This document shows, one piece after another, positions 8,873-26,314 of a stretch of DNA of 64,000 nt (position 1 is its first letter; every line of letters starts with the position of its first letter). Location of the stretch: the IMG/VR virus record IMGVR_UViG_3300010885_076238, positions 140,312 through 204,311 of that record, one strand, 5' to 3'. The position numbers were made by a program, and so were the translations under genes. The notes beneath the pieces were generated by a model. The model saw only the letters and a list, made by a program, of their open reading frames with translations, did not search any database and was not told the DNA's origin.

Positions 8873-8878
8873 GTCCTA

Positions 8879-10961: not shown

Positions 10962-11029
10962 CAGCAGAGAGAACTCGCCAAGAGGCCCAACGGCCACACT
11001 GGGAGAATTGGAGTAAGGAGCCTCTGCTG
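10962..11029 (+). ncRNA. Structured RNA 5 of cluster, or leader of the next gene
   Basis: Closing cagcagag/ctctgctg. Confidence 0.4.
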
Positions 11030-11047
11030 GGTTTCAAAGGAGTAAAT

Positions 11048-11203: not shown

Positions 11204-11248
11204 AAATAATTTCTGCCCTAATTCGTTATAAAATCAAGGAGATCATCA

Positions 11249-11473: not shown

Positions 11474-11658
11474 AAATGTTAGGAAGTTGCCATTGCGGAT
11501 CAGGCCAGCCTAGTTGGTGGGAAAACGATGCCAGAGGAATCCCTCTTGCAAGAATTTGCGAAAAGTGCAAAGAGGAAAAGCTGTCTAAGTACCGACCAGA
11601 AGTTCTGTCTAACTCAAACTACGAGGCAGACGAACCTATAGAGCCAGAAGATTACTAA
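11470..11658 (+). CDS. Small Cys-rich protein (CxCGSG...DARGI...CxxC)
   Basis: Zn-binding-type motif; coupled gene. Confidence 0.7.
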   Translation: MKMLGSCHCGSGQPSWWENDARGIPLARICEKCKEEKLSKYRPEVLSNSNYEADEPIEPEDY

Positions 11659-11673
11659 ACGGAGAGAATAATT

Positions 11674-11901
11674 ATGCAGGCGGACATAGCCACCTTGACC
11701 GTCAAGGCGAGGCAAAAGGCTCGCAAATGGGTCAAGGAAAGGCTGAAAATGCACCCCGGCAAGTTCGTGGTCAAACAAGGTGAGCAGTCTTGTCCTTGCT
11801 GGAACGGGGAAAACGCTATTCAGTTAGAGAACACGACCGACAGATGGAGCGGTTGGTTCCCCGTAACAGACATAGAAATCTCTAGCGACAATGAAAAATA
11901 A
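11674..11901 (+). CDS. Hypothetical protein
   Basis: GGAG RBS. Confidence 0.6.
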   Translation: MQADIATLTVKARQKARKWVKERLKMHPGKFVVKQGEQSCPCWNGENAIQLENTTDRWSGWFPVTDIEISSDNEK

Positions 11902-11927
11902 TTTTCACTTTTACTCGTTATCTATAT

Positions 11928-12158
11928 ATGGAACATTTAGGACATCAAAAATGGTGGTGCGACGTTTGCGACTCCAGGCAAGTGGATAGCAAAGATTCCA
12001 CAACTGGTTCGTACTATCAAGTAGCTGGCATGGAACATCCAGCCAGATCAAAAGAAGAAAAATGGACATCCATTATTTTCGCTGTCTGCTGCGAGTGTGA
12101 ACCAATCAAGGCTTTGCACAAAATCAAAGTCGAAAACCAAGTCGTTCGTAAAAATTAG
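11928..12158 (+). CDS. Small Zn-finger-like protein
   Basis: CxxC...CCEC. Confidence 0.55.
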   Translation: MEHLGHQKWWCDVCDSRQVDSKDSTTGSYYQVAGMEHPARSKEEKWTSIIFAVCCECEPIKALHKIKVENQVVRKN

Positions 12159-12284
12159 CTAATATACAAAATATTAATTAGCCAATAATTATTATTTTCA
12201 ACACCTGATGTTTATATGGAAACTAGACGGGGGCAATAAAATAATTTTCATTTCAAATCGTTATGTTCTTAGGAGGACAATGAA

Positions 12285-12467
12285 ATGAAAATTTGCACCA
12301 CCGATTCTATCTTGGAAAGCATCACTCAAAACAAGTTTGATGATGAATCCAATTCTCGTTCTGGCCGCATGAGTGGCGAAATGATGCGAATTGCCGACGA
12401 AGTCGAGCAAGAGCTAGAGGACGAGTTCATGGACGAGTGTGACGAGAGCAACAGGGAAGCGGCGTAA
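12285..12467 (+). CDS. Small acidic protein
   Basis: AGGAGG RBS; ends in -EAA. Confidence 0.6.
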   Translation: MKICTTDSILESITQNKFDDESNSRSGRMSGEMMRIADEVEQELEDEFMDECDESNREAA

Positions 12468-12555
12468 AGCCAGCATTTCCAAGGGTTTGCTGCTTGTCTC
12501 TTTTTTTTGGAAGCGCCGACCGACATTGGTCGTAGTTATCTCACAGGAGGAACCT

Positions 12556-12906
12556 ATGTATCGAAATTATGAAGAATACGAATCTGCTTTCGACAAGTTG
12601 CTAGATAACGCTCCTGCAAACGTCAAAATCAAAAAAAAGACGAGACAGGAGTTCGATTACGAAAATTATCGTGACAAGATCGAATGGTATTTGATGGAGG
12701 AATGGGGCACTGAGCCTTTCCACGAAATTTTCTTCGGCCATATCAGTGAGATCGAATCGGACGAGCCTACTCCCGAAGATTTTCGTGCAGAGGAATTGCA
12801 TGGCTGCGTCTATGACATCATCGACAGTTGCTACGAGAAGAAATTCAGCGTGAATCAGGCAGCGTCGAAAATTTATTTGTATTTGAAAAAAGAGAAGGCC
12901 ATCTAA
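12556..12906 (+). CDS. Acidic hypothetical protein
   Basis: AGGAGG RBS before ATG 12556. Confidence 0.65.
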   Translation: MYRNYEEYESAFDKLLDNAPANVKIKKKTRQEFDYENYRDKIEWYLMEEWGTEPFHEIFFGHISEIESDEPTPEDFRAEELHGCVYDIIDSCYEKKFSVNQAASKIYLYLKKEKAI

Positions 12907-12984
12907 TCAGGGCAAAATTTTTTTCGGTTCGGATCGTTATACCAATACAGGCCATGTGGCCTACTAACAAGGAGAAAAAGAAAA

Positions 12985-13341
12985 ATGCGTTTGACTGCGA
13001 AAGAAGCCGCCGAAAGGCTGAGTGTGAGTTATGTGATTGCCGCCGGTATTATGTCTTATCTTGAGGACACTGGTAAGGCCAAGGTTGTAGAGAAGAAGTT
13101 TCATGCAAGTGGGAAGGGTAAGCCAACCCGTGTCTATGAAGTAGATCAACTTACAGTGATTGACTTTGGTGATGCCGTTGCAAAGCCAGAAGTCGTGACG
13201 GTGACGGAGACAGTTGCAGTGACGGAGACGGTTGCGGTGACGGAGACGCTTCCAGCCGTGGCAGAGATTGCAGAGGATCGCGTCGAAACGCTGGATCATG
13301 TCGCTGCGGCTCTGGCTAGGCTGAAGTCTGAGGCTGCGTAA
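12985..13341 (+). CDS. Small winged-HTH-like protein, paralog 3
   Basis: N- and C-termini near-identical to 8960; VTETVA repeats in the linker. Confidence 0.75.
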   Translation: MRLTAKEAAERLSVSYVIAAGIMSYLEDTGKAKVVEKKFHASGKGKPTRVYEVDQLTVIDFGDAVAKPEVVTVTETVAVTETVAVTETLPAVAEIAEDRVETLDHVAAALARLKSEAA

Positions 13342-13522
13342 TACGCGCCCATAGGAATCCATCCCCCTCTGCTTCTCAATCGCGGAGGGGGGTGGATAAA
13401 CCTAAATTTGTGCTACTATAATAATACAACAATCGGCCGTCCGGCCGTGCCGCCACAAGCGCCACGGGTTGATTCCCCACGGGAGCCAGCCATCAAAGAC
13501 CGGCCCGCCGATTATTGCACAA

Positions 13523-13606
13523 GCCGAAGTGGCGGAATTGGCAGACGCGCCAGACTCAAAATCTGGTGTCCAAAAAGACGTGTGGGTTCAATTCCCACCT
13601 TCGGCA
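13523..13606 (+). tRNA. tRNA-Leu(CAA)
   Basis: GCCGAAG/CTTCGGC acceptor, CCAGA-CTCAAAA-TCTGG, long variable arm. Confidence 0.95.
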
Positions 13607-13691
13607 GTAACACCTACCGTTTATTATTAATTAATAATAAACCTATAAAATAATTAGTTCGCTCAATCGTTATTTGGTATGGAGGAAGGAT

Positions 13692-13868
13692 ATGTTTAGC
13701 AGGGAAGATTTACTTACAATTTTAGCGTGTTTGGAATGTAAAGAATACAACACGCAAGGCAAGATAGATTCAAGAGTTCCAGTAGAGGACGGCAAGAACG
13801 TCATCGACATCGTTGATATGTTGAACAGGATCGAAAAAATCAAAACTGTTATCAGGGATCAATTGTAA
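13692..13868 (+). CDS. Small hypothetical protein
   Basis: Promoter + GGAGG RBS. Confidence 0.55.
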   Translation: MFSREDLLTILACLECKEYNTQGKIDSRVPVEDGKNVIDIVDMLNRIEKIKTVIRDQL

Positions 13869-13937
13869 ATTCCTAAAATAATTAGTTCGCTCAATCGTTA
13901 TTTGGTATAGGGAAGATTTACTAAAAGAGAGAGTCTT

Positions 13938-14177
13938 ATGATTTTCAAACTGTTCAATGGAGCAAAAACTACAGAGGCTTGGAATCCTAATAGCCCTGAG
14001 TTTATTGACGATTGGAAACCGGAAGAACACATCATCAAGTGTCAGGCGGTTCAAGTTACTTACTGCAATCATATCAAAGTTCATGTTGACGATGATATGA
14101 TCGAGTTTCACTGGGACGAAGATGGCTTTATTGAACACGATGGCGTGTTTTATGGCGATTTCATCGTAGAAGGATAA
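13938..14177 (+). CDS. Hypothetical protein
   Basis: Promoter duplicated from 13647. Confidence 0.6.
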   Translation: MIFKLFNGAKTTEAWNPNSPEFIDDWKPEEHIIKCQAVQVTYCNHIKVHVDDDMIEFHWDEDGFIEHDGVFYGDFIVEG

Positions 14178-14184
14178 ATTACAA

Positions 14185-14856
14185 ATGTCTAACAACTATG
14201 TCACAATGAACATAAGAATGTATGCCTCCAAGCCAGATAAGGTTATGGAGCAAGTCATTCTAAATCTTGGATGGGAATGGTACTCAGCAAGCAAGGCTTG
14301 TGAATACGCCAGAAAAGTTATAAAGGGCAGATGGATCAAAGGCGAAAGAAAGATCAAGAAAAATCCATACTCCGCCTACTTTTATGCTCGCCATGTTATC
14401 GGAGGAAGATGGCCCGAAGCAGAAAATTTTATCTTGAAGGATGAACACGCCTCTTACTTGTACGCTAAGTATGTTCTCAAAGGCAGGTTTGAGAAAGCAG
14501 AGAAAAAGAGAGGGCTTTTCAAGTCGCCTAGAGAAATATACTTCTACTCCAAATACGTTATGAAGTCTAGGTGGAAAGAAAAAGAAAAGTCTATGGTAGA
14601 CTTTGTTGTAAAAAATACCTGGGGCTTTGAGAAGGTTTTCGACTACTGTATTCAGATCAGAAAAGAAAGATGGCCCCAAATTGAAGGCGAAATTGTAAAG
14701 TCCAGCAAAGAATACATCGGTCGTTATTTCAAATTATTGAAAGAAAAGGACAAGGAAGAATTTTATAATAAAGTTCTCGCCCAGTCTCTCGTAGAACCAA
14801 GAAGTTCTTGGCAACGAAACGAAGCCAGAGAATTTATCAAAACTATGAAAAACTAG
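14185..14856 (+). CDS. Helical repeat protein (YA..V.KGRW.EAE repeats)
   Basis: About five internal ~25-aa repeats. Confidence 0.7.
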   Translation: MSNNYVTMNIRMYASKPDKVMEQVILNLGWEWYSASKACEYARKVIKGRWIKGERKIKKNPYSAYFYARHVIGGRWPEAENFILKDEHASYLYAKYVLKGRFEKAEKKRGLFKSPREIYFYSKYVMKSRWKEKEKSMVDFVVKNTWGFEKVFDYCIQIRKERWPQIEGEIVKSSKEYIGRYFKLLKEKDKEEFYNKVLAQSLVEPRSSWQRNEAREFIKTMKN

Positions 14857-14878
14857 TTTGAACATACTATTATAAAGT

Positions 14879-15139
14879 ATGTATTCTGAAAAACATTGCA
14901 TCATTACAATAAATGGCGACGAGTGTACCGTAGAGGGAAAATGCCTACTGACCGATAAACGTCAATTTGTAAAAGTAGCAAAGGAAGATTATGAAAAATG
15001 GGTCAGGGGAGAAGGAGCTATAAAAACTCTTATGCCCTATCTAACCGAAAGCGAAATGAACTTTCTTGAACACGGCGTTACAGATGAAGGTTGGGGAAAA
15101 GTAGTAAGTCCAAAAATTTCAATCCCAAAAGCAGAGTAG
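14879..15139 (+). CDS. Hypothetical protein
   Basis: PYLT..E..FL..G.T..GW pattern. Confidence 0.6.
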   Translation: MYSEKHCIITINGDECTVEGKCLLTDKRQFVKVAKEDYEKWVRGEGAIKTLMPYLTESEMNFLEHGVTDEGWGKVVSPKISIPKAE

Positions 15140-15328
15140 CCCGCACAAATTTAGACGGCAATATCTTATAAATATTCTGCCTCGCATTCGTTACGACTAA
15201 AAACATATAAAATAATAATTGTCATAAAAATAAAAATCACCTGATGTTTATATGGTCAGCAGAAGGATAAAAATAATTTTCGATCCAGTGCGTTATGGAA
15301 ATATAAGTTCCACAACCGGAGAAAAGGT

Positions 15329-15574
15329 ATGACAAAGAGAGAGCAGCAGACGGTAAAAAGGATGCTGGAAACGGGCCGCGTGATTGATTTCCGTGACGAA
15401 CGCCGACCGGGGGAAGTCGCGGAGGATGGCAACGGCTTGTGGGCATACCTCAAACCTGGCCTGAGATGCAGTCTGTCCGACACCCACATTTGCCACGAAT
15501 ATACGGTGGCTGACCTAGCTCGTGCCGTCAAGTGGGCTGAACCGTGCAATTGCAACGAGTGCAATATAAAATAA
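15329..15574 (+). CDS. Hypothetical Cys-containing protein
   Basis: Promoter + RBS. Confidence 0.6.
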   Translation: MTKREQQTVKRMLETGRVIDFRDERRPGEVAEDGNGLWAYLKPGLRCSLSDTHICHEYTVADLARAVKWAEPCNCNECNIK

Positions 15575-15612
15575 TTTTCGATCCAGTGCGTTATCCCAGC
15601 AGAGGAGACAAT

Positions 15613-15768
15613 TATGCCAAACTGGTTTGAAGATCCCGCCGTTTTGGATAAGTGGACGATCATTGAAGTTCAGTTGGATGAAGCCGACTGTCAAGAATAC
15701 AACGAGTACCTTGACTGGCTTGAGGCAACAACCGGCGAACAAGAGATGCCAGAAGATTTTTCTTACTA
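15613..15768 (+). CDS. Small acidic protein (51 aa)
   Basis: Promoter + GAGGAG RBS, MPNWFEDP... Confidence 0.6.
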
Positions 15769-15819
15769 GTAAAAAATAATTTTCGATCCATTTCGTTATA
15801 GAAAACAGGAGAAAAAATA

Positions 15820-16140
15820 ATGATTACTGCAAAAAATGCGTTAGAAGCACTTTGTCGTGATGGACTCGCTACAAGTTGGACGAGGAAAACTGAGGGTAGC
15901 GGAAGGCTTCGCTACACAGATTACACTGTGAAAAGCGATGCCTTTTCCCTCTCAAACGAAACCTATGGACAAAGAAGTTTTTTATACTTTCGATGCAAAA
16001 GCCCAGAACTTACTTATCAAATAATCAAAGTTCTTCGTGAAAATGGAGGCAACCCAGGAACTAGTTGGAATGGTGGGCCTGAACAGGGACACATCGAAAT
16101 GCAAGTCAGTAGGTTCAAAGGTTGGCATTGGTGGGAGTAA
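15820..16140 (+). CDS. Hypothetical protein
   Basis: Promoter + AGGAG. Confidence 0.65.
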   Translation: MITAKNALEALCRDGLATSWTRKTEGSGRLRYTDYTVKSDAFSLSNETYGQRSFLYFRCKSPELTYQIIKVLRENGGNPGTSWNGGPEQGHIEMQVSRFKGWHWWE

Positions 16141-16405
16141 GAAGCACAAAAATAAAAATAAAGTCTAGCCCAACCTGCCCAATACATATTCATACAGAAT
16201 GGCAGGTTGGGCTTAGGTGCTTAAACACCTAGTGTTTATTATAAGAATAAATAAAAAATTGGGGTTGGGCGCATTTCTATCGCTCTTATCGCTGTGACAA
16301 TTTGATAACGATTCTTTTCAAAAATAATTTTCCCAAAAATTATTTTCCCTTTCGACCGTTGTGCAGTATGGCCGCGATTGAGACGGCCAAGCCAAATCGG
16401 GAAAC

Positions 16406-16987
16406 ATGAAAATGGATACGATGACTTCGGATCAGTTGGTTGACCGTCTGCTTGATCTGCGTGGTGCGAAGTGCGGCTTTCGCATGGTCGCTGAAACCCC
16501 GACCCGTCTGAATAAGACGATTCGTGATGCGGCGGGCAATCGCGTTCCGAACCCCGCCTACGGCACTACAAAGTTGTCGGAAGTGGAAGTGACGCTGAAC
16601 CCGATCCATCAGAACAACGTAAACGCTCAGAAAAAGCGTGAGGGACACGATCCCGATTACGTTGCTGGGCCTTGCCAGTGGGGCAAGCGTCTGTTTCGGG
16701 AGGATGGTACGGTCGTGCCGATTCGGATTCACGACGGCAAGCCGCATAGCATGGTCGTGAAGTTTGAGAGAACGATCCAACGCGAGTTCCTCCGCGACGG
16801 CAAGCCGGTTGATGCGGCATCGGCCGCAGAGATTGCAAAGCAGTTGGCAGAGAAGAATGAAAAGGCCAACGACGCTGCGGAAGAAAAGCAGGGCGTGGAA
16901 AAGCCGGTGATCCACTTGACCTACAGTTTCGAGAACATTCGTCAAGTCACGCTCGACGGCGTGGTTTACGAAATCACTAAGGGTTGA
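16406..16987 (+). CDS. Hypothetical cassette protein
   Basis: Promoter, leader hairpin, high-GC codon usage, downstream hairpin at ~16996-17026. Confidence 0.7.
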   Translation: MKMDTMTSDQLVDRLLDLRGAKCGFRMVAETPTRLNKTIRDAAGNRVPNPAYGTTKLSEVEVTLNPIHQNNVNAQKKREGHDPDYVAGPCQWGKRLFREDGTVVPIRIHDGKPHSMVVKFERTIQREFLRDGKPVDAASAAEIAKQLAEKNEKANDAAEEKQGVEKPVIHLTYSFENIRQVTLDGVVYEITKG

Positions 16988-17101
16988 CCGATCCGGCCCC
17001 TCCCCCTACTGGGGGAGGGGTTAGGGGATAAAGAATAATTTCCGATCCGGTTCGTTATCTAGTATGGCCGCGATTGAGACGGCCAAAAAAGGAGAGCGAT
17101 C

Positions 17102-17338
17102 ATGACCTACCTTCACGACATTCACCCCGCCGCGACGATCATCGAAAGCCCGTTCACCGGCCACAACGGCAGCGGAGTCGATGGATACGGCGGGAAAATC
17201 AAAACCGGATTCAAGGTCAGAATCAACAATCGACTCCATAGGCTCTACTGTATGTGCTGGTCGAACTCTGGCACACTTTGGGTCAACGTGGGCGGGAAGC
17301 AGATCATCGTTCACGAGCATCGGCATCCAAGGGAATAA
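17102..17338 (+). CDS. Conserved phage hypothetical protein (GYGGKI.T...RLY..CWSNSGT)
   Basis: Promoter, leader hairpin, AGGAG. Confidence 0.7.
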   Translation: MTYLHDIHPAATIIESPFTGHNGSGVDGYGGKIKTGFKVRINNRLHRLYCMCWSNSGTLWVNVGGKQIIVHEHRHPRE

Positions 17339-17545
17339 AATCCCATTCATCAAACACCTGATGTTTATATAGCGGCGGACGAGCCGCGCCGAGCCTGGGC
17401 TGGGCGCATTTCTATCGCTCTTGTCCCTCTGACATTTTGATAACGAATTAGATGGAAAAAAATTTTGGCCAAAATTATTTTGGCTTTCGACCGTTATGCA
17501 GTATGGCCGCGATTGAGACGGCCAGCCTTAGTGGGAGATTGAATC

Positions 17546-18487
17546 ATGGCTCATAAAGTCGAAAACATGTTCTACGTTGGCGAGACGCCTTGGCATGGTC
17601 TGGGCGTTGCTTTGGAAGAGGCTCCGATCATTTCCGACGCCATTACGGCGGCGGGTCTGGATTGGACTGTCGGACTCCGCGACCTTTTCACGGCAGACGG
17701 CGTAAAGGTGCCGAATCGTGCGACGGTTCGCGAGACGGACGGAAGTGTGCTGGGCGTTGTCGGCCCGCGTTACACTCCGCTCCAAAATGCGGCGGCTCTC
17801 GACTGGTTTCAGCCGTTCATCGACAGCGGAGAGGCTTCGCTTCACACTGCCGGTAGCCTTGACGAGGGTCGCAAGGTCTGGGTGCTTGCCCAGTTGAACC
17901 GCGACCCCAGTGTGATCGTTCCGGGCGACGACGTTCGCAAGTTCATTCTCTTGTCGAATTCGCACGACGGCACGACGGCGGTTCGTCCGGGTTTCACGCC
18001 GATTCGCGTTGTCTGTGCGAATACGCTCGCGGCGGCTCATTGCTCGACCGCCAGCAAGTTGATTCGCGTTCGTCACACTCGCAAGATTGCGACGAATTTG
18101 GAAAAGGTTCGCGAGTTGATGAACGCCGCGAACGCGGAATTCGAGGCGACTGCCGACCAGTATCGGCATCTTGCCAGCAAGGCGTTCAACCAGACCGACG
18201 TTCGCAAGTACGTCAAGGTGCTGCTCGACGTTGAGACGGTTTCGGATGCCGACCTGCCCACTCGCACCAAGAATACCATCGAGGAAATTCTTGGACTGAT
18301 CGAGGGGCCGAAGCAATCGATGCCGGGCGTTCAAGGCACTTGGTGGGCCGCGTACAACGGGTTCAACGAATACTTGAACTACAATCGCGGTCGCACGACC
18401 GACAACCGTATGAACAGCCTATGGTTCGGCATGGGTGCGACCGACAACCGCAAGGCTCTCGACCTTGCCCTTAGCTTGTCGGCCTAG
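17546..18487 (+). CDS. DUF932 (LGT_TIGR03299)-family protein
   Basis: PWHGLG, Y.PLQN, NSHDG, TPIRVVCANTL, GTWWAAYN motifs. Confidence 0.9.
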   Translation: MAHKVENMFYVGETPWHGLGVALEEAPIISDAITAAGLDWTVGLRDLFTADGVKVPNRATVRETDGSVLGVVGPRYTPLQNAAALDWFQPFIDSGEASLHTAGSLDEGRKVWVLAQLNRDPSVIVPGDDVRKFILLSNSHDGTTAVRPGFTPIRVVCANTLAAAHCSTASKLIRVRHTRKIATNLEKVRELMNAANAEFEATADQYRHLASKAFNQTDVRKYVKVLLDVETVSDADLPTRTKNTIEEILGLIEGPKQSMPGVQGTWWAAYNGFNEYLNYNRGRTTDNRMNSLWFGMGATDNRKALDLALSLSA

Positions 18488-18607
18488 TGCGAACGATGCC
18501 CCCTACCCGAAAGGGTAGGGGGGATTCATCGTAAAATTATTTTCGGTTTGATTCGTTATCTAGTATGGCCGCGATTGAGACGGCCAAGCCAATCGGGAGA
18601 CCTAATC

Positions 18608-18796
18608 ATGATCATCGCCGCCATCCTCGCCGCCGCGTACGTCGCTTTCGGCATCGCCGGGACATCGTACGTCAACCGTTGGATTCGCAACGCTGACGAC
18701 GGGGATGCAGGCTGCGGCCTGTCGAGCCTGCACATTCTCAACCCCATCATGGTGGTGGTTGGAGCGAGAATGATGCTCGACAAGCTGTCCTCCTAG
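18608..18796 (+). CDS. Small membrane protein, copy 1
   Basis: Hydrophobic N-terminus; paralog of 25015. Confidence 0.7.
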   Translation: MIIAAILAAAYVAFGIAGTSYVNRWIRNADDGDAGCGLSSLHILNPIMVVVGARMMLDKLSS

Positions 18797-18926
18797 CGGG
18801 GGGCAGCCGCCCAACTCAACACCTAATGTTTATTGGCAAAGGTGAGCAATAAAAAATAAATTCCCAGCTAATTCGTTATCTAGTATGGCCGCGACAGTGA
18901 CGGCCAAGCCAATCTAGGAAATAACG

Positions 18927-19268
18927 ATGGCTCGCAAGCGTAGGTCAGACCGTAATCACGCGGTCTATCAGATTGTTTGCAAACCAACTGGAGAGCGTTA
19001 CATCGGACTGACGGTAGTGCGTGGAAGAGCCGTTCAGAAGAGCGTGAAGATTCGTTGGGACGGCCATGTTCATCACGCCGTAGTAGAGAGAGACAACCCG
19101 CTTCAACGTAGAATTCGTGAGTTTGGCCCCGAAGCATTTTCTCACGAACTGCTTCAAGTTGTGAGAGGCAAGCAGCCCGCTCATGACATTGAAAGGGGCT
19201 TGATCGTCAATATGAAGCCCGAACTGAATGTGGAGTGTACCGGCAAGAAACAAGCAAATCGTTCCTAA
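18927..19268 (+). CDS. GIY-YIG nuclease-like protein
   Basis: VYQI...YIGLT...RW..H...E...PELN. Confidence 0.75.
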   Translation: MARKRRSDRNHAVYQIVCKPTGERYIGLTVVRGRAVQKSVKIRWDGHVHHAVVERDNPLQRRIREFGPEAFSHELLQVVRGKQPAHDIERGLIVNMKPELNVECTGKKQANRS

Positions 19269-19324
19269 TTTTTTCGACTCTCATTCGTTATACAAATGTA
19301 GCCACCACCCCAAGCAGGAAAAAA

Positions 19325-19528
19325 ATGACTATCACAGAAGTCATCACGCCCGGCCCAGGCGGATTCAAATTTCTCAACATGACGAACGAGAAGTTCGACT
19401 CGTTCACCGCAGACGAAATCATTGCCGCTGCGGAAGCGGCCGGTCTGTGGACATACTACGAACTGGACGACGACGGGAAGCTGACCGGCTTGGCGATCAC
19501 CACGAAAGAAAGAGAGCCAAACGGATAG
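19325..19528 (+). CDS. Small hypothetical protein
   Basis: Promoter + AGGA. Confidence 0.6.
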   Translation: MTITEVITPGPGGFKFLNMTNEKFDSFTADEIIAAAEAAGLWTYYELDDDGKLTGLAITTKEREPNG

Positions 19529-19763
19529 CGGGCTTTGGCCCAATGCTCTAACACCTAATGTTTATAATCAACAGTGAGTTGCTTGCCAAAACCAAAGGAG
19601 CCGGACATGGAAACTTTTGAGCAGTGGTGCAAGAGGATGCAAGAAGAACACGATCAATGGATTTCAAGTCCCGAAGGACAAATCTGGATCAAGGGCTAAA
19701 AATTATTTTCGGTTTGATTCGTTATCAAGTATGGCCGATCATTCAACACCTAAGGAACAAGTC

Positions 19764-20078
19764 ATGAAAGCCAAAGAAGTGCAGATTGGACAGGAGTTCT
19801 ACACCAACTACGCGAGCATGGAACACTGCAAGCCGCTGTCTAACGTTCATCGTTGGAAAATGATCGCTCCAGAGCATCGGTTGGCGCAGCTTGTGCTTGT
19901 CACCGGGGACGTTTGCGATCACACTCGCATCATCGATGAAAAGGAAGAAGTGTTCGCCACAGCCGGTGAAGCTTGGCAAGATTGTGCGACTCAACTCAAC
20001 GCGATCATCGAAAAGATTCGTGAAGCCGTCAAGGATTGCGAGTCCAAAGTTCCCCGCCAGTGCAAGGAATCCGCGTGA
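19764..20078 (+). CDS. Hypothetical protein
   Basis: Promoter + AAGGA; start re-assigned. Confidence 0.6.
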   Translation: MKAKEVQIGQEFYTNYASMEHCKPLSNVHRWKMIAPEHRLAQLVLVTGDVCDHTRIIDEKEEVFATAGEAWQDCATQLNAIIEKIREAVKDCESKVPRQCKESA

Positions 20079-20137
20079 AAAAGGGGGCTTGGGAAACCAA
20101 GTCCCCAATAATTAACACCAAATGTCTATTATAGAGT

Positions 20138-20422
20138 ATGAGACTATTTATTGATGACATCAGAACTCCATCCGAAGACTACATCGTTCTCCGGTCTTCT
20201 GAGGATGCCATTCAATTCATAAAGCAAAATGGCTGGCCTGAGTTCATCAGTTTTGACCACGATCTTGGCGGCGACGATACCACTATGGTCTTTCTCAAAA
20301 GGCTTGTAAACGAAGTATGGGACGGCAAAACCATGCCGCCAGACTATATCGTTCATAGTGCCAACCCAATTGGATCGAAGAACATCGTGAGTTTCATGGA
20401 AAGCTGGAAGAAGTCAATCTAA
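20138..20422 (+). CDS. Cyclic-phosphate-processing receiver-like domain protein
   Basis: LFIDDIR...ISFDHDLG...VHSANPIG signature. Confidence 0.8.
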   Translation: MRLFIDDIRTPSEDYIVLRSSEDAIQFIKQNGWPEFISFDHDLGGDDTTMVFLKRLVNEVWDGKTMPPDYIVHSANPIGSKNIVSFMESWKKSI

Positions 20423-20496
20423 AAAATTTTTTTTACTTTCATTCGTTATACCAATATGGCAGCAATTGAGACTGCCGGATTACTAGGATTGCTCTA

Positions 20497-20574
20497 ATGT
20501 TTGGACTCGTTTCTATGATTTTGTTTAGCGTCGGAACTATTGGATTTTTCTACGTCACTAAGGAGGGCAACTAA
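20497..20574 (+). CDS. Putative 25-aa membrane peptide
   Basis: After leader hairpin + AGGA; MFGLVSMILFSVGTIGFFYVTKEGN. Confidence 0.45.
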   Translation: MFGLVSMILFSVGTIGFFYVTKEGN

Positions 20575-20726
20575 TGTTTATCGTAATTGAGCAGAAGGAA
20601 GACGGCACGACTCAGATTCTTTCGCCCGTAATCAACGACCAGAAAGAAGCAGAAGTAGAGGCTGCTTGGATTTCCCACCTGAACGGTTGGAGTTGCACAG
20701 TAAAGCAAGTGGATCAAGCCGCTTGA
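20574..20726 (+). CDS. Small hypothetical protein (50 aa)
   Basis: AAGGAGG RBS; TAATG coupling; ends in -QAA. Confidence 0.55.
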   Translation: MFIVIEQKEDGTTQILSPVINDQKEAEVEAAWISHLNGWSCTVKQVDQAA

Positions 20727-20858
20727 AACAATCGGCAGTAAACCTGCCACCCAACCCAAAAGGTTGGGCCATTAGCAAATACCTAATGTTTATTGTTGAA
20801 TCGAACCTGATAAAAATAATTTTCGATCTAGTTCGTTATAGATTTAGGAGGACGTTTT

Positions 20859-21071
20859 ATGACTAAGCCCGTTGAAATCTCAACCAAGGAAATGTGGGAA
20901 CTCTCAGCAGTGGGAGCCTGCATTCTTCTAGCTGTTCAAGAGATGGAAGAAGATGCTGTCGGCAGGCAAAAGGTGATCGAAGCGGGAAACCGTTTGTTCG
21001 ATCTCATGGGCAAAATTGGAGAACGAGATGATTGGTCATCCAGAAGCCCAAAAGGAGAGGAAAAAGTATGA
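20859..21071 (+). CDS. Hypothetical protein
   Basis: Promoter + AGGAGG. Confidence 0.6.
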   Translation: MTKPVEISTKEMWELSAVGACILLAVQEMEEDAVGRQKVIEAGNRLFDLMGKIGERDDWSSRSPKGEEKV

Positions 21072-21234
21072 AAAAAACTGTCGGAGCAACCAAGGCTCAC
21101 GCATCATGCGGATATTGCAAACACTTGCGCAAGTTCGGAAAGCGACTTGCCAATAAGGCTTCTCGCAAACACGGAAATAATTTTCGATTCAATGCGTTAT
21201 CAAATATAGAGAATCCCAACCCCGGAGAATAATC

Positions 21235-21465
21235 ATGTTCAAGAAGAAAACCGATGGTCGATTCCGTGTCGAGCTGAAGTATAAGAACGGCAGCGAAGCA
21301 TTCATGGTCAGCAACGACTACCAGCAAATCTGCCGCCTGTACGAGCTTGCCAGAACTCCCATTTGCGAAAATTTCACACAGTCGATCTACGAAGTGATCT
21401 TGTTCGACGGCGATAAGCCCCTTGCAAACTGGACTAACTCAGCCGCATTAGTCAAAGTGGCTTGA
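21235..21465 (+). CDS. Hypothetical protein
   Basis: Promoter + GGAG. Confidence 0.6.
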   Translation: MFKKKTDGRFRVELKYKNGSEAFMVSNDYQQICRLYELARTPICENFTQSIYEVILFDGDKPLANWTNSAALVKVA

Positions 21466-21473
21466 CAATCCTA

Positions 21474-21550
21474 GGCGATTCTGGGTAGGGCCGGTCTCAT
21501 GAGCCGGATTGGGTAGCACCCCCCGCGTGGTTCGATTCCACGACTCGCCA
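21474..21550 (+). tRNA. Atypical D-arm-less tRNA-like RNA, anticodon CAT
   Basis: Acceptor GGCGATT/ACTCGCC-A, anticodon arm CCGGT-CTCATGA-GCCGG, T-arm CGTGG-TTCGATT-CCACG; only 10 nt in place of the D-arm. Confidence 0.65.
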
Positions 21551-21585
21551 TTTAGAATGCGGTAAAATGCAACAAGGAGCAAACC

Positions 21586-21825
21586 ATGAATACTGAATTT
21601 TATGTGGGCGAACACCGTGGTATCTGGGTAGGCCCAGTCATCCGAAATAAACAGACGAATCATCCTGTGGCATTCGTCGCAGCCGGATCAGAACACTTTT
21701 CCGAAATATTATCCCTAGCACCAGAAATGCTTGAAGCACTACGGAAAATCAGGAATAACTCAGACAACGCGGAAGTCAACAAAATCGCATCAGAAATCCT
21801 ACTCAAGGCAACCAAACACGCCTAA
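21586..21825 (+). CDS. Hypothetical protein (APEMLEAL motif)
   Basis: AAGGAG RBS; common phage motif. Confidence 0.65.
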   Translation: MNTEFYVGEHRGIWVGPVIRNKQTNHPVAFVAAGSEHFSEILSLAPEMLEALRKIRNNSDNAEVNKIASEILLKATKHA

Positions 21826-22011
21826 TCGTCAACACCTAATGTTTATTTCCCGAACGGGACAATTCAGACAAAAATCAGGCAATTTATAATAATTATTCCC
21901 GCTCGGGAAAGTTAGGTAATCTGTGCAAGCCCATAAAAGAAAATAAAAAATCCAAGGCCCGATTGACGATAGATAAGGTACGGGACAGAAAACCATTCAA
22001 AGGAGTGAATC

Positions 22012-22278
22012 ATGTTGGCTTGGATCGGAATCGCAATAACCGCCGTTGGAATGATTTTTAGTAGCTATGAGTTCGTGAAAAAAAATCCAGAACTCTTGCC
22101 CAAAGTTCAAAACGTACAACTGCTGGCCCATCGTCAACGTCAATCAGCGTTCATGTACAGTCAAGTAAATTTGGCCTATGATGTTGTGAACGGAAAACAT
22201 TGGTTTCAACACCCAGACGGTCAGTGGAGAGAATTCCCACCAAAACCCTCTCAAGTCGATATGCAAAACAGCCGATAA
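22012..22278 (+). CDS. Membrane-anchored hypothetical protein
   Basis: N-terminal hydrophobic helix; AAGGAG. Confidence 0.6.
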   Translation: MLAWIGIAITAVGMIFSSYEFVKKNPELLPKVQNVQLLAHRQRQSAFMYSQVNLAYDVVNGKHWFQHPDGQWREFPPKPSQVDMQNSR

Positions 22279-22902
22279 ATAAAATAAGGAAAGGAATCCA
22301 AAATGAAAAAAATCAACTGGAACCAAATCGTCAACGCTCTTATTCTTGTCAAAATAGGACAAGACTTAGGAACCAACTCGCAACTTACCCAATCCATCCA
22401 TCATATCATCGACGTTATTGCTACGTTCGCTAATGCCTTTGTAAGAATATAAAATAATTTCTCGATCAGTTCGTTATACAATAGTGGCCGTCCCATTCTC
22501 AGGAGAGCAAACATGAACACTGACACCAACTGGACTTACGAGCGCGAGGGAGCCAAAGAGATGATCGCAAGGCTCGAAGAAGAAATTCAGAATTCGACCT
22601 CCAAGCAGGATCGAATCAACAAACAGGAAGAAATACAAAGACTCCAATCGTAAAGAGTCAAAAAATAATTTTCAATCCCGTTCGTTATACAATAGTGGTC
22701 AACTAAAGGTGCTGACTGAAAGTGACACACGGCGGACAAGGTGGCCGACCGCAGGATCAGCACCACTCTAAAGGATCAAAAATGTATCTGACTCTCAATG
22801 ATTGGATGATGCTCGTTGGACTGATTTCTTTCGCAGGATTCTGTTCCTACACTGCCCACGAAATTCAAGGTGCAATCCACAACTACTTACATGGAGAATA
22901 TA

Positions 22903-23247
22903 ATGATTTTTGAAGTTGAAATGCTCGCGTTCGGAAAACCAGGAGAAGTTCGCAAGGTCAATGTTCCCGATGAGGCTCTAACTCGCGCAAAAGAAGATAC
23001 AGACAATATTCTTGAAGCCGCGTTTTATTACGGCCAAAACGATTTCCAGCCGCAAAACCACCCGTCAGTAAGTGCTGGCGATGTGATCCGCTGGAAAGAA
23101 GAAAACTATCTGGTTGCTGGTATGGGTTTCAAAAAGCTGACCGATGAACAACTAAATGATTATCGATCTCTCGACCAAAACGATAAGTTCATCGGAAGAT
23201 GCCAAATTGAAATAGGCGAACCAGTAGTAGGACGCAGAAACAAGTAA
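22903..23247 (+). CDS. YodL-like protein
   Basis: PSVSAGDVI...YLVAGMGFKKL resembles the YodL signature. Confidence 0.6.
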   Translation: MIFEVEMLAFGKPGEVRKVNVPDEALTRAKEDTDNILEAAFYYGQNDFQPQNHPSVSAGDVIRWKEENYLVAGMGFKKLTDEQLNDYRSLDQNDKFIGRCQIEIGEPVVGRRNK

Positions 23248-23442
23248 CCTGCACAATTCCATCAAACCATCAAAGCCCTAATAAATAATAAATATCGCTT
23301 ACGAAAGTGATATTTATAGGGCTTTATCTAACACCTAATGTTTATAAAACATCGCTAGTCGAAAAAAATAATTTTCGATCCAGTGCGTTATGCCAATGTG
23401 GGCAGCAATTGAGACTGCCCCCGTTTTCAGGAGGTTTGAATC

Positions 23443-23652
23443 ATGGGTGACGAAGATTCCTTTCTCGATTCGCGTTGGGAAGAAATTTGCGAGTATGAAG
23501 ACTCGTACGAGCAAGAGGATTGCTTCGATGACTTCGACGATGAAGATGATGAATACGATTGCTTCAGCGAAGACGACAACGACGACTTTGAAGACGACTT
23601 CGCTGACGACAACTACGACGACTACGACGACTTCTACGAGGAAGCCGCGTGA
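23443..23652 (+). CDS. Extremely acidic small protein (DNA-mimic candidate)
   Basis: More than half D/E with spaced F/Y; promoter, leader hairpin, AGGAGG. Confidence 0.7.
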   Translation: MGDEDSFLDSRWEEICEYEDSYEQEDCFDDFDDEDDEYDCFSEDDNDDFEDDFADDNYDDYDDFYEEAA

Positions 23653-23797
23653 AAATAGGGGGCTTGGGAAACCAAGCTTCCCCCAACTATCAACACCTAA
23701 TGTTTATAATGCCAACCCGCCGGAAACTTCTCGAAGAAAAATAATTTTCCATTCAAATCGTTATAAATCATCGGCCCAAAACCCTGAGGATCAAATC

Positions 23798-24343
23798 ATG
23801 AGCTACGAAAACGCCCCCGCCACCATCATGCTCGCGACCCACTGCTGCTGCTGCGGTCGCCCACTGGTCGATGCTATCTCTGTTGAGATGGGTATCGGCC
23901 CCGATTGCCGTCAAGGTCGCACCGATGGCATTTCCAAAGAACAGCAAGAAATCTGCAACAAACTCACCCATGCCGCCGCTCTTGCCGCGCAGGAAGGTCA
24001 AGTCGAGAAGGTTCGCGCGATTGCCGCCGAAATTGCCGCTCTAGGTCTGACTGAATTGGCCGATAAGGTTCAGCACCGTTTCGTCAACGCTGAAAGATTG
24101 GCAAAGATCAATATCATTCAGACCGGCGACCGTCTGACCGTTACAACCCCGTGGAAACGTAGCAGCGACTTTGTTGCCGCATGGAGAACCATTCCCGGCA
24201 GACGATATGGCGGGGCCGGTAAGAACATCATCCCCCTTAGCAGCAAGGGTGAGTTGTGGAATCTGCTACAGAAGTTCTTCCCCGGCCAATTCGGCAAGGG
24301 GCCAAAGGGACTGTTCAGAGTCCCTAAGAACGAGGCGGCTTGA
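23798..24343 (+). CDS. DUF6011-like Zn-ribbon protein
   Basis: CCCCGRPLVD..S...GIGPDC; start re-assigned after the promoter at 23737. Confidence 0.75.
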   Translation: MSYENAPATIMLATHCCCCGRPLVDAISVEMGIGPDCRQGRTDGISKEQQEICNKLTHAAALAAQEGQVEKVRAIAAEIAALGLTELADKVQHRFVNAERLAKINIIQTGDRLTVTTPWKRSSDFVAAWRTIPGRRYGGAGKNIIPLSSKGELWNLLQKFFPGQFGKGPKGLFRVPKNEAA

Positions 24344-24567
24344 CTGCCTGCACAAATTATATGCCCCCGAAATCCAAATGGAGAGTAGGGGTCGCGTTAT
24401 ACAGAAAAAACTTTAGAAATAAATATTAATACCTAATGTTTATTTTTATTCGCGCCGGTAGCCGGTAGCCGGTCGAGTTCGCCGGTAGTAAAAAAATAAT
24501 TTCCGATCCGGTTCGTTATACCAATATGGCCGCGATTGAGACGGCCAGCCAATCGGGAGGATGGGAC

Positions 24568-24858
24568 ATGGCGACTTGGATCAACGGCGACCCGGTGAAT
24601 GTTGTTGCAGGCATGATCAGGAGCCGCTGGTTGCTTCTGCCCGCAACTTGGTTTGAATCAGGCATGGGCGTCAAAGTGGACGACGAACGCAAATTCGTCC
24701 ATGTGATCGACCGACGCGGAAAGCCCGTGGGCAATCCCATAAAGTTTTGGGATGATGCTCCGGCCGGTGGCGGATCAAAAGAAGATGCCATCAACGAGTG
24801 CAAAGCATTCGGAGAGACATACGCACAAATTTTCCGCCCCCGAAATCCACAAGGATAG
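24568..24858 (+). CDS. Hypothetical cassette protein
   Basis: Promoter, leader hairpin, GGAGG. Confidence 0.6.
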   Translation: MATWINGDPVNVVAGMIRSRWLLLPATWFESGMGVKVDDERKFVHVIDRRGKPVGNPIKFWDDAPAGGGSKEDAINECKAFGETYAQIFRPRNPQG

Positions 24859-25014
24859 TAGGGGTCGCGTTATACAGAAACGGCAGAAAATATTTGGCCT
24901 GCCACTTAACACCTAACGTTTATTTTTGATGGTGGGCAGCAAAAAATAATTTTCGGTTTGGTGCGTTATCTAGTATGGCCGCAATTGAGACGGCCAGCCA
25001 ATCGGGAGCTTGTC

Positions 25015-25209
25015 ATGATCGCCATCGTCATCGTCACCGCCGCGTACGTCGCTTTCGGCATCGCGGGGTACTCGTACGTCAACCGTTGGATTTGCCACGG
25101 CCTTGACGACGGCAATGAGTCTGGAACTGGCCTGTCGTGCTTGCACATTCTCAACCCCATCATGGTGGCGGTTGGAGCGAGAATAATGCTCGACAAGCTG
25201 TCCTCCTAG
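25015..25209 (+). CDS. Small membrane protein, copy 2
   Basis: Paralog of 18608 in a duplicated cassette. Confidence 0.7.
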   Translation: MIAIVIVTAAYVAFGIAGYSYVNRWICHGLDDGNESGTGLSCLHILNPIMVAVGARIMLDKLSS

Positions 25210-25343
25210 CGGAGGGCAGCCGCCCAACCAAACACCTAATGTTTATAAGTGAGCGAACGCGCGGCTCCCGAATAATTTTCAATTTCATTCGTTATCCAGT
25301 ATCGCCGCACTTGTGACGGCAGGCCGACCATAGGAACCAACCC

Positions 25344-25649
25344 ATGACCACCACTCGCGAAACGCTTCTGGCCGAGTTTGCCTCCGTCTACAGCCGCACA
25401 GGCTGGAGGGTCGCCGCTTCTCTCGACGGCATGACCGTGGATCAGTTGCAGACCACGCTCGACGGTCTGTACGAAGCCATCAGTGAGGAAAGGGAAAAGA
25501 TGGACGCTTGGTTCGCAAGACAGAACGAGGATGCTGAAATGTCTGCCCGTGAGTGGGAGCAGTTGCAGGCAAAAGCCGATGCTGAGGCTGCTGCCGAAGC
25601 TGAGTGGTCGAAGTGGCAACACCACTACGACAGGCTGGTAGGGGTGTGA
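25344..25649 (+). CDS. Hypothetical acidic helical protein
   Basis: Promoter, variant leader hairpin, AGGA. Confidence 0.65.
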   Translation: MTTTRETLLAEFASVYSRTGWRVAASLDGMTVDQLQTTLDGLYEAISEEREKMDAWFARQNEDAEMSAREWEQLQAKADAEAAAEAEWSKWQHHYDRLVGV

Positions 25650-25778
25650 CCCGCCTCATATCGAAACACCTAATGTTTATAATGGGCCTGAGTTAGCCGA
25701 AAATAATCCGCCCACCCAACCGTTATCAGTGTAGCGACCGCATATGTGACGGTCTCGCCTACCCTTGGAGTTCCTGCC

Positions 25779-26207
25779 ATGTACACCACTCCCTCCTTCG
25801 TGAAGAACGTTCTCCCCGCTGGCAAGATCCCCGGCATGGAAGCCCACTACAGCGATCTGTCCGACTTGAGCATCACCATCCCCTTCGCACTCATGGGATG
25901 GGACGATGGCCTCGACTGTGGCTACCAAGACTCCCCGCCCACTGATTACGTTGTAGGGGCTTTCGAGAATCGTGATGAGGCTGAGGATCAGCTTGCTTCC
26001 TGTGTGCAAAACAACCCAGCCGGTATCTATTGGATCGTGGAGAGCTATCAGGAGCCGCTGTACAGCTTCAATAGCGTCAGCTGGGACGGAATCAATAGGG
26101 ATGCCTATCTGTCCATGTCGCTCACCCGCGAGGATGTCATACGCCTTGAGAGCAGGCTGGTAAGGGAGAAGACCCAGAGCGACCATACAGTTGTGCGACT
26201 GGCCTAA
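25779..26207 (+). CDS. Hypothetical protein
   Basis: Promoter, variant leader hairpin, GGAG. Confidence 0.6.
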   Translation: MYTTPSFVKNVLPAGKIPGMEAHYSDLSDLSITIPFALMGWDDGLDCGYQDSPPTDYVVGAFENRDEAEDQLASCVQNNPAGIYWIVESYQEPLYSFNSVSWDGINRDAYLSMSLTREDVIRLESRLVREKTQSDHTVVRLA

Positions 26208-26314
26208 TGCACAGCACGACTGCACAGAACCAAGGCATCCTGCTGCCAGAACGGCAAGCAGGGCCGCAATCAAACACCTACGGTCTATTATATAATCGAA
26301 CACCCAATGTTTAT

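What the first reader, a model, noticed from the sequence alone, without database searches (positions are those of the whole stretch)
18532..25246. Whole-cassette duplication and shared cassette ends
Seen: 18532-18833 and 24942-25246 are the same unit (promoter, hairpin, membrane-protein ORF, hairpin, box), with similarity ending at the box. Unrelated ORFs 19764 and 23443 share the 3' end ccgcgtgaaaa..gggggcttgggaaaccaag..cccc-box. 24350-24408 and 24823-24880 share gcacaaatt..gcccc-gaaatcca..agtaggggtcgcgttatacagaaa. Promoter blocks 9322/9794 and 13647/13875 are also duplicated. Inference: active modular exchange of ORFs between standard flanks.
Basis: seen in the sequence. Interest (0 to 1): 0.6.

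Follow-up and report, generated by a model that had tools for sequence, protein, structure and literature searches.

The report
Phage gene cassettes swapped at promoters
An uncultured giant phage carries an 18-kb array of tiny genes, each bracketed by the same promoter and end-signal, and related strains differ by whole genes gained, lost or replaced at those signals. This matches the "regulatory cassette shuffling" known from T4-like phages, seen here in an unrelated phage with its own signals.

Summary

**Setting.** The window is the end of a 204-kb virus record. Window 8.1-26.3 kb is a hyperplastic early-gene region with:
- about 48 small + strand ORFs;
- 34 copies of a phage-specific promoter (A-tract, 11 nt, CGTTAT);
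- about 20 copies of a 15-nt end box.

**Duplicated cassette.** Identity between 18533-18833 and 24943-25246 starts at the promoter A-tract and stops at the box.

**Unrelated ORFs share flanks.** One pair (9317-10036) has 40/40 identical promoters and identical boxes.

**Related contigs.**
- Three assemblies are 99.98-100% identical to the window.
- Four other cassette arrangements exist at 87-98% identity.
- They show at least eleven ORF-precise insertions, deletions or replacements. Nearly all junctions lie in or within about 20 nt of promoters, A-tracts, ribosome-binding sites, the box or a composite repeat.

**A distant relative** keeps the same architecture with different promoter and box sequences. 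It is collinear outside the region and shuffled inside it.

**Closest known:** PeSL-mediated modular shuffling in T4-type phages.

**Different here:** a non-sigma-70 promoter, a separate 5' stem-loop, the box, and no detectable relative among the 50,697 deposited phage genomes. The function of the box is unresolved.

The parts
8100..26314 (+). Hyperplastic early-gene region: about 48 small + strand ORFs, 34 promoters and about 20 boxes. ORF GC is 0.37-0.61, against 0.31-0.35 for the backbone beyond 26.3 kb.
   Evidence: Synteny with relative G001 breaks at 8084 and the region ends at the tandem boxes 26274/26300.
18533..18559 (+). Promoter of cassette copy A (A-tract, 11 nt, CGTTAT).
   Evidence: The left edge of the duplication lies here (A1).
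18567..18585 (+). 5' stem-loop just downstream of the inferred transcript start (5-bp stem, 9-nt conserved loop).
   Evidence: 13 copies; 98.5% of cells paired; one C-G to A-U compensated pair in 5 copies. Predicted fold.
18608..18796 (+). ORF of 62 aa, a small hydrophobic protein (copy A).
   Evidence: 100% aa identity in strain L210 with changes only at third codon positions. No Pfam or PHROG hit.
18784..18807 (+). 3' stem-loop spanning the stop codon (-18.6 kcal/mol), with no T-run after it.
   Evidence: Not counted as an intrinsic terminator.
18819..18833 (+). End box (ACACCTrATGTTTAT). The right edge of the duplication.
24943..25246 (+). Cassette copy B: promoter 24943-24969, 5' stem-loop 24977-24995, ORF 25015-25209 (64 aa), 3' stem-loop 25197-25220, box 25232-25246.
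20065..20132 (+). Shared 3' module (last three codons, 10-bp stem-loop, box) on ORF 19764-20078.
23639..23710 (+). The same 3' module on the unrelated ORF 23443-23652.
24350..24559 (+). Composite repeat, copy 1: 58-nt 3' element, box, promoter, 5' stem-loop, SD.
24568..24858 (+). ORF of 96 aa lying between the two composite repeats. Its last 12 codons are encoded by repeat copy 2. Absent from strain L210 and from the ERZ21844512 contig.
24823..25008 (+). Composite repeat, copy 2.
9317..10036 (+). Two adjacent cassettes with identical promoter+SD (40/40 nt) and identical boxes, but unrelated ORFs (9364-9750, 128 aa; 9838-10014, 58 aa).
13646..13915 (+). Adjacent promoter pair, 95% identical, in front of unrelated ORFs 13692-13868 and 13938-14177.
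15329..15574 (+). ORF of 81 aa replaced in strain L210 by an unrelated 65-aa ORF, between two conserved promoters.
15780..16142 (+). Promoter plus ORF 15820-16140, absent in strain L210. Both borders lie in an AAAAATAA tract.
19262..19680 (+). Promoter, ORF 19325-19528, stem-loop, box and ORF 19607-19699. Absent in L211, L212 and L213; partly replaced by a 105-aa ORF in L210.
20843..21174 (+). Promoter-to-promoter segment (ORFs 20859-21071 and most of 21068-21232) absent in L210. In L211 only ORF 20859 is deleted, SD to SD.
22489..22658 (+). 5' UTR plus ORF 22513-22653 (46 aa). In L211 it is replaced by a 96-aa paralogue of the 8960/12985 family. The replaced stretch runs from just after the CGTTATA of one promoter to the A-tract of the next.
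   Evidence: A 211-nt shorter gap in the ERZ21844512 contig equals the promoter spacing.
18927..19268 (+). ORF of 113 aa resembling only the GIY-YIG catalytic domain of phage homing endonucleases. It lies next to the most variable slot.
   Evidence: phrog_7168 at E 4.7e-7. No Pfam or PDB hit.
16262..16389 (.). 128-nt repeat (second copy 17397-17524, 85%) holding a back-to-back promoter pair. These are the only two - strand promoter copies in the 204-kb record.
   Evidence: Conserved in L204.

Best explanation
Window 8.1-26.3 kb is the hyperplastic early-gene region of an uncultured phage of about 230 kb.

**Anatomy (shown).** Small accessory genes are packaged as expression cassettes made of:
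- a phage-specific promoter (A-tract, 11 nt, CGTTAT);
- often a conserved 5' stem-loop;
- an SD and one to three ORFs;
- a 3' stem-loop;
- 5-13 nt later, a 15-nt box.

**Roles of the parts (inferred).**
- CGTTAT acts as the -10 element, with the start 6-7 nt downstream. At least 14 promoters have an ATG exactly there.
- The 5' stem-loop then sits at the very 5' end of the RNA and probably stabilises it.
- The stem-loop plus box ends the transcription unit.

**Exchange mechanism (inferred).** Dozens of copies of these short signals lie in one orientation. Recombination between them, within a genome or between co-infecting relatives, would delete, duplicate, insert or replace whole ORFs and leave each newcomer correctly wired.

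**Shown:** the anatomy, the duplicates, the shared flanks and the strain-level ORF-precise polymorphisms.

**Not shown:** that the motif is a promoter, where transcripts start and end, and whether the joints arise by homologous, microhomology-mediated or nuclease-stimulated recombination.
For: **Motif statistics**
- 96 promoter copies on the + strand and 2 on the - strand over 111 kb, none beyond 25721.
- Box: 25 matches against 0.27 expected, 24 of them on the + strand.

**Repeats within the genome**
- The edges of the cassette duplication sit at the A-tract and the box (A1).
- Unrelated ORFs share identical flanks.
- Neighbouring promoters are more alike than random pairs: 4 of the 13 pairs at 85% identity or more are neighbours, permutation p about 1e-4. 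The ORFs behind the three neighbour pairs that lie in the window are unrelated.

**Strain variants**
- L210 shows 2 replacements and 3 indels plus a promoter indel over 10 kb.
- L211, L212 and L213 show a further deletion, a replacement, an insertion just before a box and two SD-to-SD deletions.
- The gene map of the ERZ21844512 contig combines these states differently.

**Evidence that the ORFs are real genes with different histories**
- Shared ORFs are under purifying selection: codon positions 1+2 are 0.81-1.00 identical and position 3 is 0.64-1.00.
- Third-position divergence is heterogeneous among cassettes (chi-square 99, df 17, p 1e-13).
- ORF GC3 ranges from 0.31 to 0.83.

**Distant relative G001**
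- It is collinear from w-17716 to 8084. Inside the region only 12 of about 48 ORFs are shared, and they are out of order.
- It has its own promoter and box sequences and its own cassette duplications.
Against: - No expression data exist.
- The motif is not sigma-70 consensus, and the 3' stem-loops are not classic intrinsic terminators.
- No RecA/UvsX, RecT or YqaJ homologue was found in the 88%-complete record.
- Several joints use only 5-8 nt of identity (SD, ATC). These fit microhomology-mediated better than homologous recombination.
- The duplicated cassette is old: dS is about 0.16 and dN/dS about 1.1.
- Three assemblies of the same strain show no variation.
- The variants are metagenome assemblies, so repeat-induced misjoins are conceivable for the simple deletions.
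Confidence: 0.8

Rival explanations
1. The repeats are only conserved regulatory signals kept alike by selection. They play no part in gene exchange, and cassette differences arise by unrelated illegitimate events.
For: - The consensus parts (A-tract, CGTTAT, box) are what a transcription signal would conserve.
- Each lineage has its own sequences, which suggests co-evolution with a recognition factor.
- Some joints use only 5-8 nt.
Against: - Identity extends through non-consensus spacer positions (40/40 nt) and through module-specific stem-loops. That indicates common descent, not convergence.
- Nearly all of at least eleven strain breakpoints sit in or within about 20 nt of the signals.
- Indel lengths equal repeat spacings: 361, 473 and 211 nt.
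Confidence: 0.08
2. Double-strand breaks made by the GIY-YIG homing-endonuclease-like protein (18927-19268), or by the HNH endonuclease elsewhere in the genome, drive the exchange. Repair from a co-infecting relative co-converts neighbouring cassettes.
For: - The ORF matches homing-endonuclease PHROGs.
- The slot just downstream of it has three different states among strains.
- An HNH endonuclease ORF exists at G000 126056-127375.
Against: - The ORF is only 113 aa, a catalytic domain without a DNA-binding domain, and has no Pfam hit.
- Polymorphic slots are spread over at least 10 kb, not only next to it.
- It does not explain why joints sit at regulatory signals.
Confidence: 0.1
3. This is an integron-like system. 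The box, or the stem-loop plus box, is a site for a dedicated site-specific recombinase that captures cassettes.
For: - There is one-orientation, ORF-by-ORF punctuation by a conserved short site after each unit.
- An ORF insertion lies exactly in front of a box.
Against: - No tyrosine or serine recombinase was found in the record, while the controls rang.
- Many joints lie at promoters or SDs, not at the box.
- The box is conserved in sequence rather than as an imperfect palindrome.
- Most cassettes carry their own promoter.
Confidence: 0.03
4. The cassette differences are metagenome assembly artefacts caused by the repeats.
For: Simple deletions between direct repeats are what a collapsed assembly graph would give.
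Against: - The variant contigs differ from the window by 2-13% throughout, so they are other strains.
- Replacements bring in new intact ORFs.
- The 19262-19680 deletion recurs in contigs from five samples.
- Absence of the 96-aa ORF recurs in two samples.
- Several joints have under 10 nt of repeat.
- The window's own arrangement was assembled identically three times.
Confidence: 0.03

Closest known systems
PeSLs (promoter-early stem-loop cassettes) of T4-type phages: Arbiol et al. 2010 (PMC2839356); Comeau et al. 2014 (PMC4122927)
   Same: - Dozens of copies of a composite promoter/stem-loop motif are concentrated in hyperplastic regions, mostly just upstream of ORFans.
- Related phages differ by indels and replacements of the flanked ORFs.
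- An ORF flanked by two copies in one phage corresponds to a single copy in another, as with ORF 24568 here.
- The proposed mechanism is recombination between the motifs.
   Different: - The promoter is not sigma-70 consensus, and its sequence differs between relatives.
- The stem-loops are separate elements, one at the 5' end of the transcript and one at the 3' end.
- There is an additional conserved 15-nt box.
- SD-to-SD joints also occur.
- The two proteins searched (SNF2 helicase and an 828-aa ORF) have no close match among 50,697 deposited phage genomes, and no Gp23 hit was found, although that control was silent.
- Mini-circles could not be tested.
Morons (extra genes with their own promoter and terminator inserted between phage genes; Hendrix and colleagues, from memory)
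   Same: They are autonomous promoter-ORF-terminator units of foreign composition inserted between genes.
   Different: Here the units form one long one-orientation array with standardised flanks. They are not isolated insertions that each carry their own signals.
Integron gene cassettes
   Same: They are a one-orientation array of small, mostly unknown ORFs, each followed by a short conserved site, and cassette content varies between close relatives.
   Different: There is no integrase. The site is conserved in sequence and is not a structured attC. Most cassettes carry their own promoter, and joints also fall at promoters and SDs.
Cyanophage 'ORFanage' region (PMC4503421)
   Same: It is a cluster of small ORFans in a large phage that is gained and lost as blocks.
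   Different: That paper describes a spontaneous large deletion. It does not describe a motif-bounded, ORF-by-ORF polymorphism with lineage-specific signals. I saw only its title, abstract start and term hits.

Membership tests
PeSL-type regulatory cassettes | A repeated composite motif containing an early promoter | tested here: inconclusive
   A repeated, strictly co-oriented promoter-like motif is present: 96 copies on the + strand, 2 on the - strand. It is not sigma-70 consensus and no expression data were obtainable.
PeSL-type regulatory cassettes | A stem-loop associated with the promoter that acts as terminator or attenuator | tested here: inconclusive
   Stable 3' stem-loops lie 5-13 nt before the box and 31-61 nt before the next promoter. 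None has a T-run. Terminator activity was not tested.
PeSL-type regulatory cassettes | Motifs concentrated in hyperplastic regions, next to ORFans | tested here: met
   There is one promoter per 514 bp in 8.2-25.7 kb, against one per 1.5 kb upstream. Most ORFs have no Pfam or PHROG hit.
PeSL-type regulatory cassettes | Indels and replacements between related phages are bounded by the motifs | tested here: met
   Junction alignments; gene-map distances.
PeSL-type regulatory cassettes | Circular excision products (mini-circles) | not testable with these tools
   This needs reads or PCR.
PeSL-type regulatory cassettes | Host phage belongs to the T4 superfamily | tested here: inconclusive
   There was no Gp23 match, but the control genomes were silent. 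The two large proteins searched found no close relative among deposited phages.
Integron | An IntI-type tyrosine recombinase next to the array | tested here: not met
   No PF00589 or PF00239 match in the 204-kb record, while the controls rang. The record is 88% complete.
Integron | attC sites: imperfect palindromes conserved in structure rather than sequence | tested here: not met
   The box is conserved in sequence. It has at most a 4-bp dyad, and the stem-loops before it differ in sequence.

The most novel reading that the evidence does not exclude
The box is not a passive terminator or promoter. It is the recognition site of an unidentified phage-encoded activity, either a nuclease/recombinase or an RNA-processing enzyme. 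Together with the lineage-specific promoter sequences, it would make the array a dedicated capture-and-express platform: a phage 'integron without integrase' whose address labels co-evolve with their reader in each lineage.
Probability: 0.07. Interest if true: 0.85.

Novelty: new variant of a known kind. Interest (0 to 1): 0.55.

Why it matters
- It would extend motif-mediated cassette shuffling, described so far for T4-type phages, to an unrelated uncultured giant phage.
- It does so with natural strain variants that show ORF-precise gain, loss and replacement. This points to a general way in which large phages turn over their accessory (probably host-takeover or anti-defence) genes.
- The lineage-specific promoter and box sequences give a handle on how the transcription signals and their reader co-evolve.
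- The motifs give a simple rule for delimiting real small genes in such genomes.

Tried and rejected
- **Near-identical DNA in deposited phages:** none.
- **Box and 5' stem-loop patterns in IMG/VR:** only single chance hits, or none.
- **Rfam:** nothing in 16-26.7 kb even at E of 1 or less.
- **Promoter pattern with a 12-nt gap:** chance level. The correct gap is 11 nt.
- **First structure string for the 5' stem-loop:** it was off register.
- **The single - strand box (34064-34078, 2 mismatches):** it lies in coding sequence and is compatible with chance, so it does not settle promoter versus terminator.
- **Sequencing-run search:** I did not try to reach reads by another route, so no reads were laid.
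- **T7-type RNA polymerase and Gp23 searches:** no hit, but the controls were silent, so they are uninformative.
- **PDB sequence searches of ORFs 8960 and 18927:** nothing.
- **Protein search with an 828-aa core ORF against deposited phages:** no match.
- **Structure prediction and complex prediction:** not used, because no claim depends on them.

Full report
**Context.** The window is the last 64 kb of a 204,311-bp IMG/VR virus record that is judged 88% complete.
- It carries 11 tRNAs and a tmRNA.
- GC is 0.31-0.35 beyond 26 kb and 0.44-0.54 between 8 and 26 kb.
- There is no near-identical deposited phage. The SNF2 helicase reaches only 32% identity in cultured phages, and an 828-aa ORF finds nothing.

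**The repeated signals.**
- *Promoter-like motif.* A position matrix built from the motif (A-tract AAAATAAT.., about 11 nt, CGTTAT) finds 96 copies on the + strand from window -85369 to 25721. It finds only two on the - strand. A simple pattern gives 39 matches against 0.79 expected.
- *Density.* There is one copy per 514 bp between 8.2 and 25.7 kb, and one per 1.5 kb upstream.
- *Leaderless arrangement.* In at least 14 copies an ATG that opens the gene lies 5-6 nt after CGTTAT. I therefore read CGTTAT as the -10 element with the start at that A. This is an inference.
- *5' stem-loop.* In 13 copies the same position begins a conserved stem-loop. 98.5% of cells are paired, and one C-G to A-U compensated pair occurs in five copies.
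- *Box.* A second signal, ACACCTrATGTTTAT, occurs 25 times against 0.27 expected, 24 of them on the + strand. Genome-wide it runs from -17788 to 26300. It follows gene ends, 5-13 nt after a stable stem-loop. In 18 of 23 cases a promoter follows within 46-138 nt.
- *Not the classic signals.* Sigma-70 consensus sites and classic intrinsic terminators are not what these are.

**Checking the finding.**
- Alignment A1 shows that 18533-18833 and 24943-25246 share nothing upstream of the A-tract. They are then alike through promoter, stem-loop, SD, ORF, 3' stem-loop and box, and diverge right after the box.
- The proteins are 73% identical with two in-frame indels. dS is about 0.16 and dN/dS about 1.1, and the flanks are 92% identical.
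- ORFs 19764-20078 and 23443-23652 share only their last three codons, a 10-bp stem-loop and the box (A4).
- The ten bases CCGCGTGAAA occur exactly three times in the window. Each time they lie across an ORF stop (9322, 20078, 23652).
- The 58-nt repeat at 24350/24823 is the start of a longer composite repeat: 3' element, box, promoter, 5' stem-loop. It brackets ORF 24568-24858, whose last 12 codons lie inside copy 2 (A3).
- The promoter pairs at 9322/9795 and 13646/13874 are 100% and 95% identical.
- The first pair also has identical boxes, with ORFs that give no BLASTP alignment at all.
- Across all promoters, neighbours are more alike than random pairs: 4 of the 13 pairs at 85% or more are neighbours, p about 1e-4. 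The ORFs behind the three neighbour pairs that lie in the window are unrelated.

**A distant relative.**
- One IMG/VR record (G001, 118.5 kb; helicase 69% identical) has the same architecture in different words. Its promoter is AAAATAAAA..TAGAATGTTAT and its box is GGTTAGCATTTATCC. It also has its own cassette duplications.
- Protein comparison shows strict collinearity from w-17716 to 8084. After that, only 12 of about 48 ORFs are shared, and they are out of order.
- For DUF932, nucleotide similarity covers the ORF and essentially nothing else.
- A 1.2-kb contig (L204) shows a third promoter version in front of an ORF that is 94% identical to 16406-16987.

**Strain variants, the decisive test.**
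- Two JGI contigs and one Logan contig are 99.98-100% identical to the window.
- A word search with the duplicated small protein, followed by cluster members and contig look-ups, gave other strains.

*L210 (87-91% identical) differs by:*
- replacement of ORF 15329-15574 by an unrelated 65-aa ORF between two conserved promoters;
- absence of promoter plus ORF 15820-16140, with both borders in an AAAAATAA tract;
- replacement of 19251-19588 by a 105-aa ORF, plus a promoter after box 19551 that the window lacks;
- absence of 20843-21174, from promoter core to promoter core;
- absence of 24560-24838, which leaves one copy of the composite repeat.

*L211 (95-98% identical), and L212/L213 for the first item, differ by:*
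- absence of 19262-19680;
- replacement of the 5' UTR plus the 46-aa ORF, from just after CGTTATA of one promoter to the A-tract of the next. The incoming 96-aa ORF is a paralogue of the 8960/12985 family and carries the typical 5' stem-loop;
- a 72-aa ORF inserted between the end of ORF 21586 and box 21832;
- two SD-to-SD deletions that remove exactly one ORF each.

*A contig without DNA (ERZ21844512)* combines these states in another way. Its gap lengths differ from the window by 211 and 455 nt, matching the repeat spacings.

*Shared ORFs:*
- They are under purifying selection.
- Third-position divergence varies from 0 to 36% between cassettes (chi-square p 1e-13). This points to different histories for neighbouring cassettes.
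- Promoters (mean 0.84 identity) are less conserved between strains than ORFs (0.92) or boxes (0.93).

**Mechanism.**
- The best reading is recombination between short regulatory signals that are repeated many times in one orientation. It acts within genomes and between co-infecting relatives.
- This is the model proposed for PeSLs in T4-type phages (PMC2839356, sections read; PMC4122927, abstract).
- The joints range from 170-210-nt repeats, through 27-40-nt promoter cores, to 5-8-nt SD or other microhomology. More than one recombination route is therefore likely.
- No RecA/UvsX, RecT or YqaJ gene, and no tyrosine or serine recombinase gene, was found in the record.
- A GIY-YIG catalytic-domain ORF lies beside the most variable slot and may contribute.
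- *What the box does is open.* Its place after stem-loops and the tandem copies at the end of the region suggest a terminator or processing signal. However, four boxes in the window, and several in G001, are followed directly by SD-ATG with no other promoter. That would fit a second promoter class, perhaps read by the phage's sigma-like ORF.

**Limits.**
- There are no expression or read-level data.
- The variants are metagenome assemblies. Even so, the recurrence of junctions across samples and the new ORFs in replacements argue against artefacts.

**Verdict.**
- The feature is a new variant of PeSL-type modular shuffling, in a phage with no detectable relative among deposited genomes.

Noticed in passing
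window 21474-21550 (+): A tRNA-like element with acceptor stem, T-arm with a TTCGATT loop, a long extra arm, a weak or absent D-arm and an odd anticodon loop. ARAGORN calls it only at a relaxed threshold, and Rfam gives no hit. It is nevertheless 100% identical over 78 nt (21476-21553) in strain L210, where the average identity is 91%.
   Followed up: partly
window 16262-16389 and 17397-17524: A 128-nt repeat containing the only two - strand promoter copies of the record, back to back with + strand promoters. The - strand transcript would run antisense into the preceding box and gene end. The element is conserved in L204 and L210.
   Followed up: partly
G000 promoters, e.g. window 2979, 3193, 3698, 7032, 11916: At least 14 promoters have the gene's ATG 5-6 nt after CGTTAT with no Shine-Dalgarno sequence. 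This suggests leaderless mRNAs.
   Followed up: no
window 26338-26549, 28865-28904, 29117-29156: A different AT-rich repeated motif (ATTTTACAAAAATTTTAATTAA-like) starts right after the tandem boxes at 26274/26300, where GC drops from 0.54 to 0.34. It may be another promoter class. GC-rich structured stretches lie between the copies.
   Followed up: no
G000:C1:58185-59198 (outside the window): An ORF of 337 aa with a weak sigma-70 region 2 match (24.9 bits in the genome search, over the 24-bit cut-off; 23.2 bits in the Pfam scan). It is a candidate reader of one of the phage-specific signals.
   Followed up: partly
window 43909-44044 (-): Rfam calls a tRNA spanning 136 nt, next to the ARAGORN tRNA-Ser at 43817-43904. 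It may be a tRNA with an insertion or intron.
   Followed up: no
window 27023-28410 (+): Two adjacent ORFs (240 and 222 aa) are tandem paralogues, 77-79% identical over 300-340 nt.
   Followed up: no
contig of ERZ21844512 (gene map only): After the homologue of the last cassette ORF (142 aa) comes a - strand 372-aa gene, not the + strand genes seen at window 26.6 kb. The right-hand neighbour of the region may therefore differ between strains.
   Followed up: no
window 741-1010, 8960-9322, 12985-13341; L211 4041-4331: A small multi-copy protein family (45-63% identical among the three window copies) occupies different slots in the window, in strain L211 and in G001. It has no Pfam or PDB hit.
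   Followed up: partly
window 56942-64000 (+): An open reading frame of at least 2353 aa runs off the end of the record.
   Followed up: no
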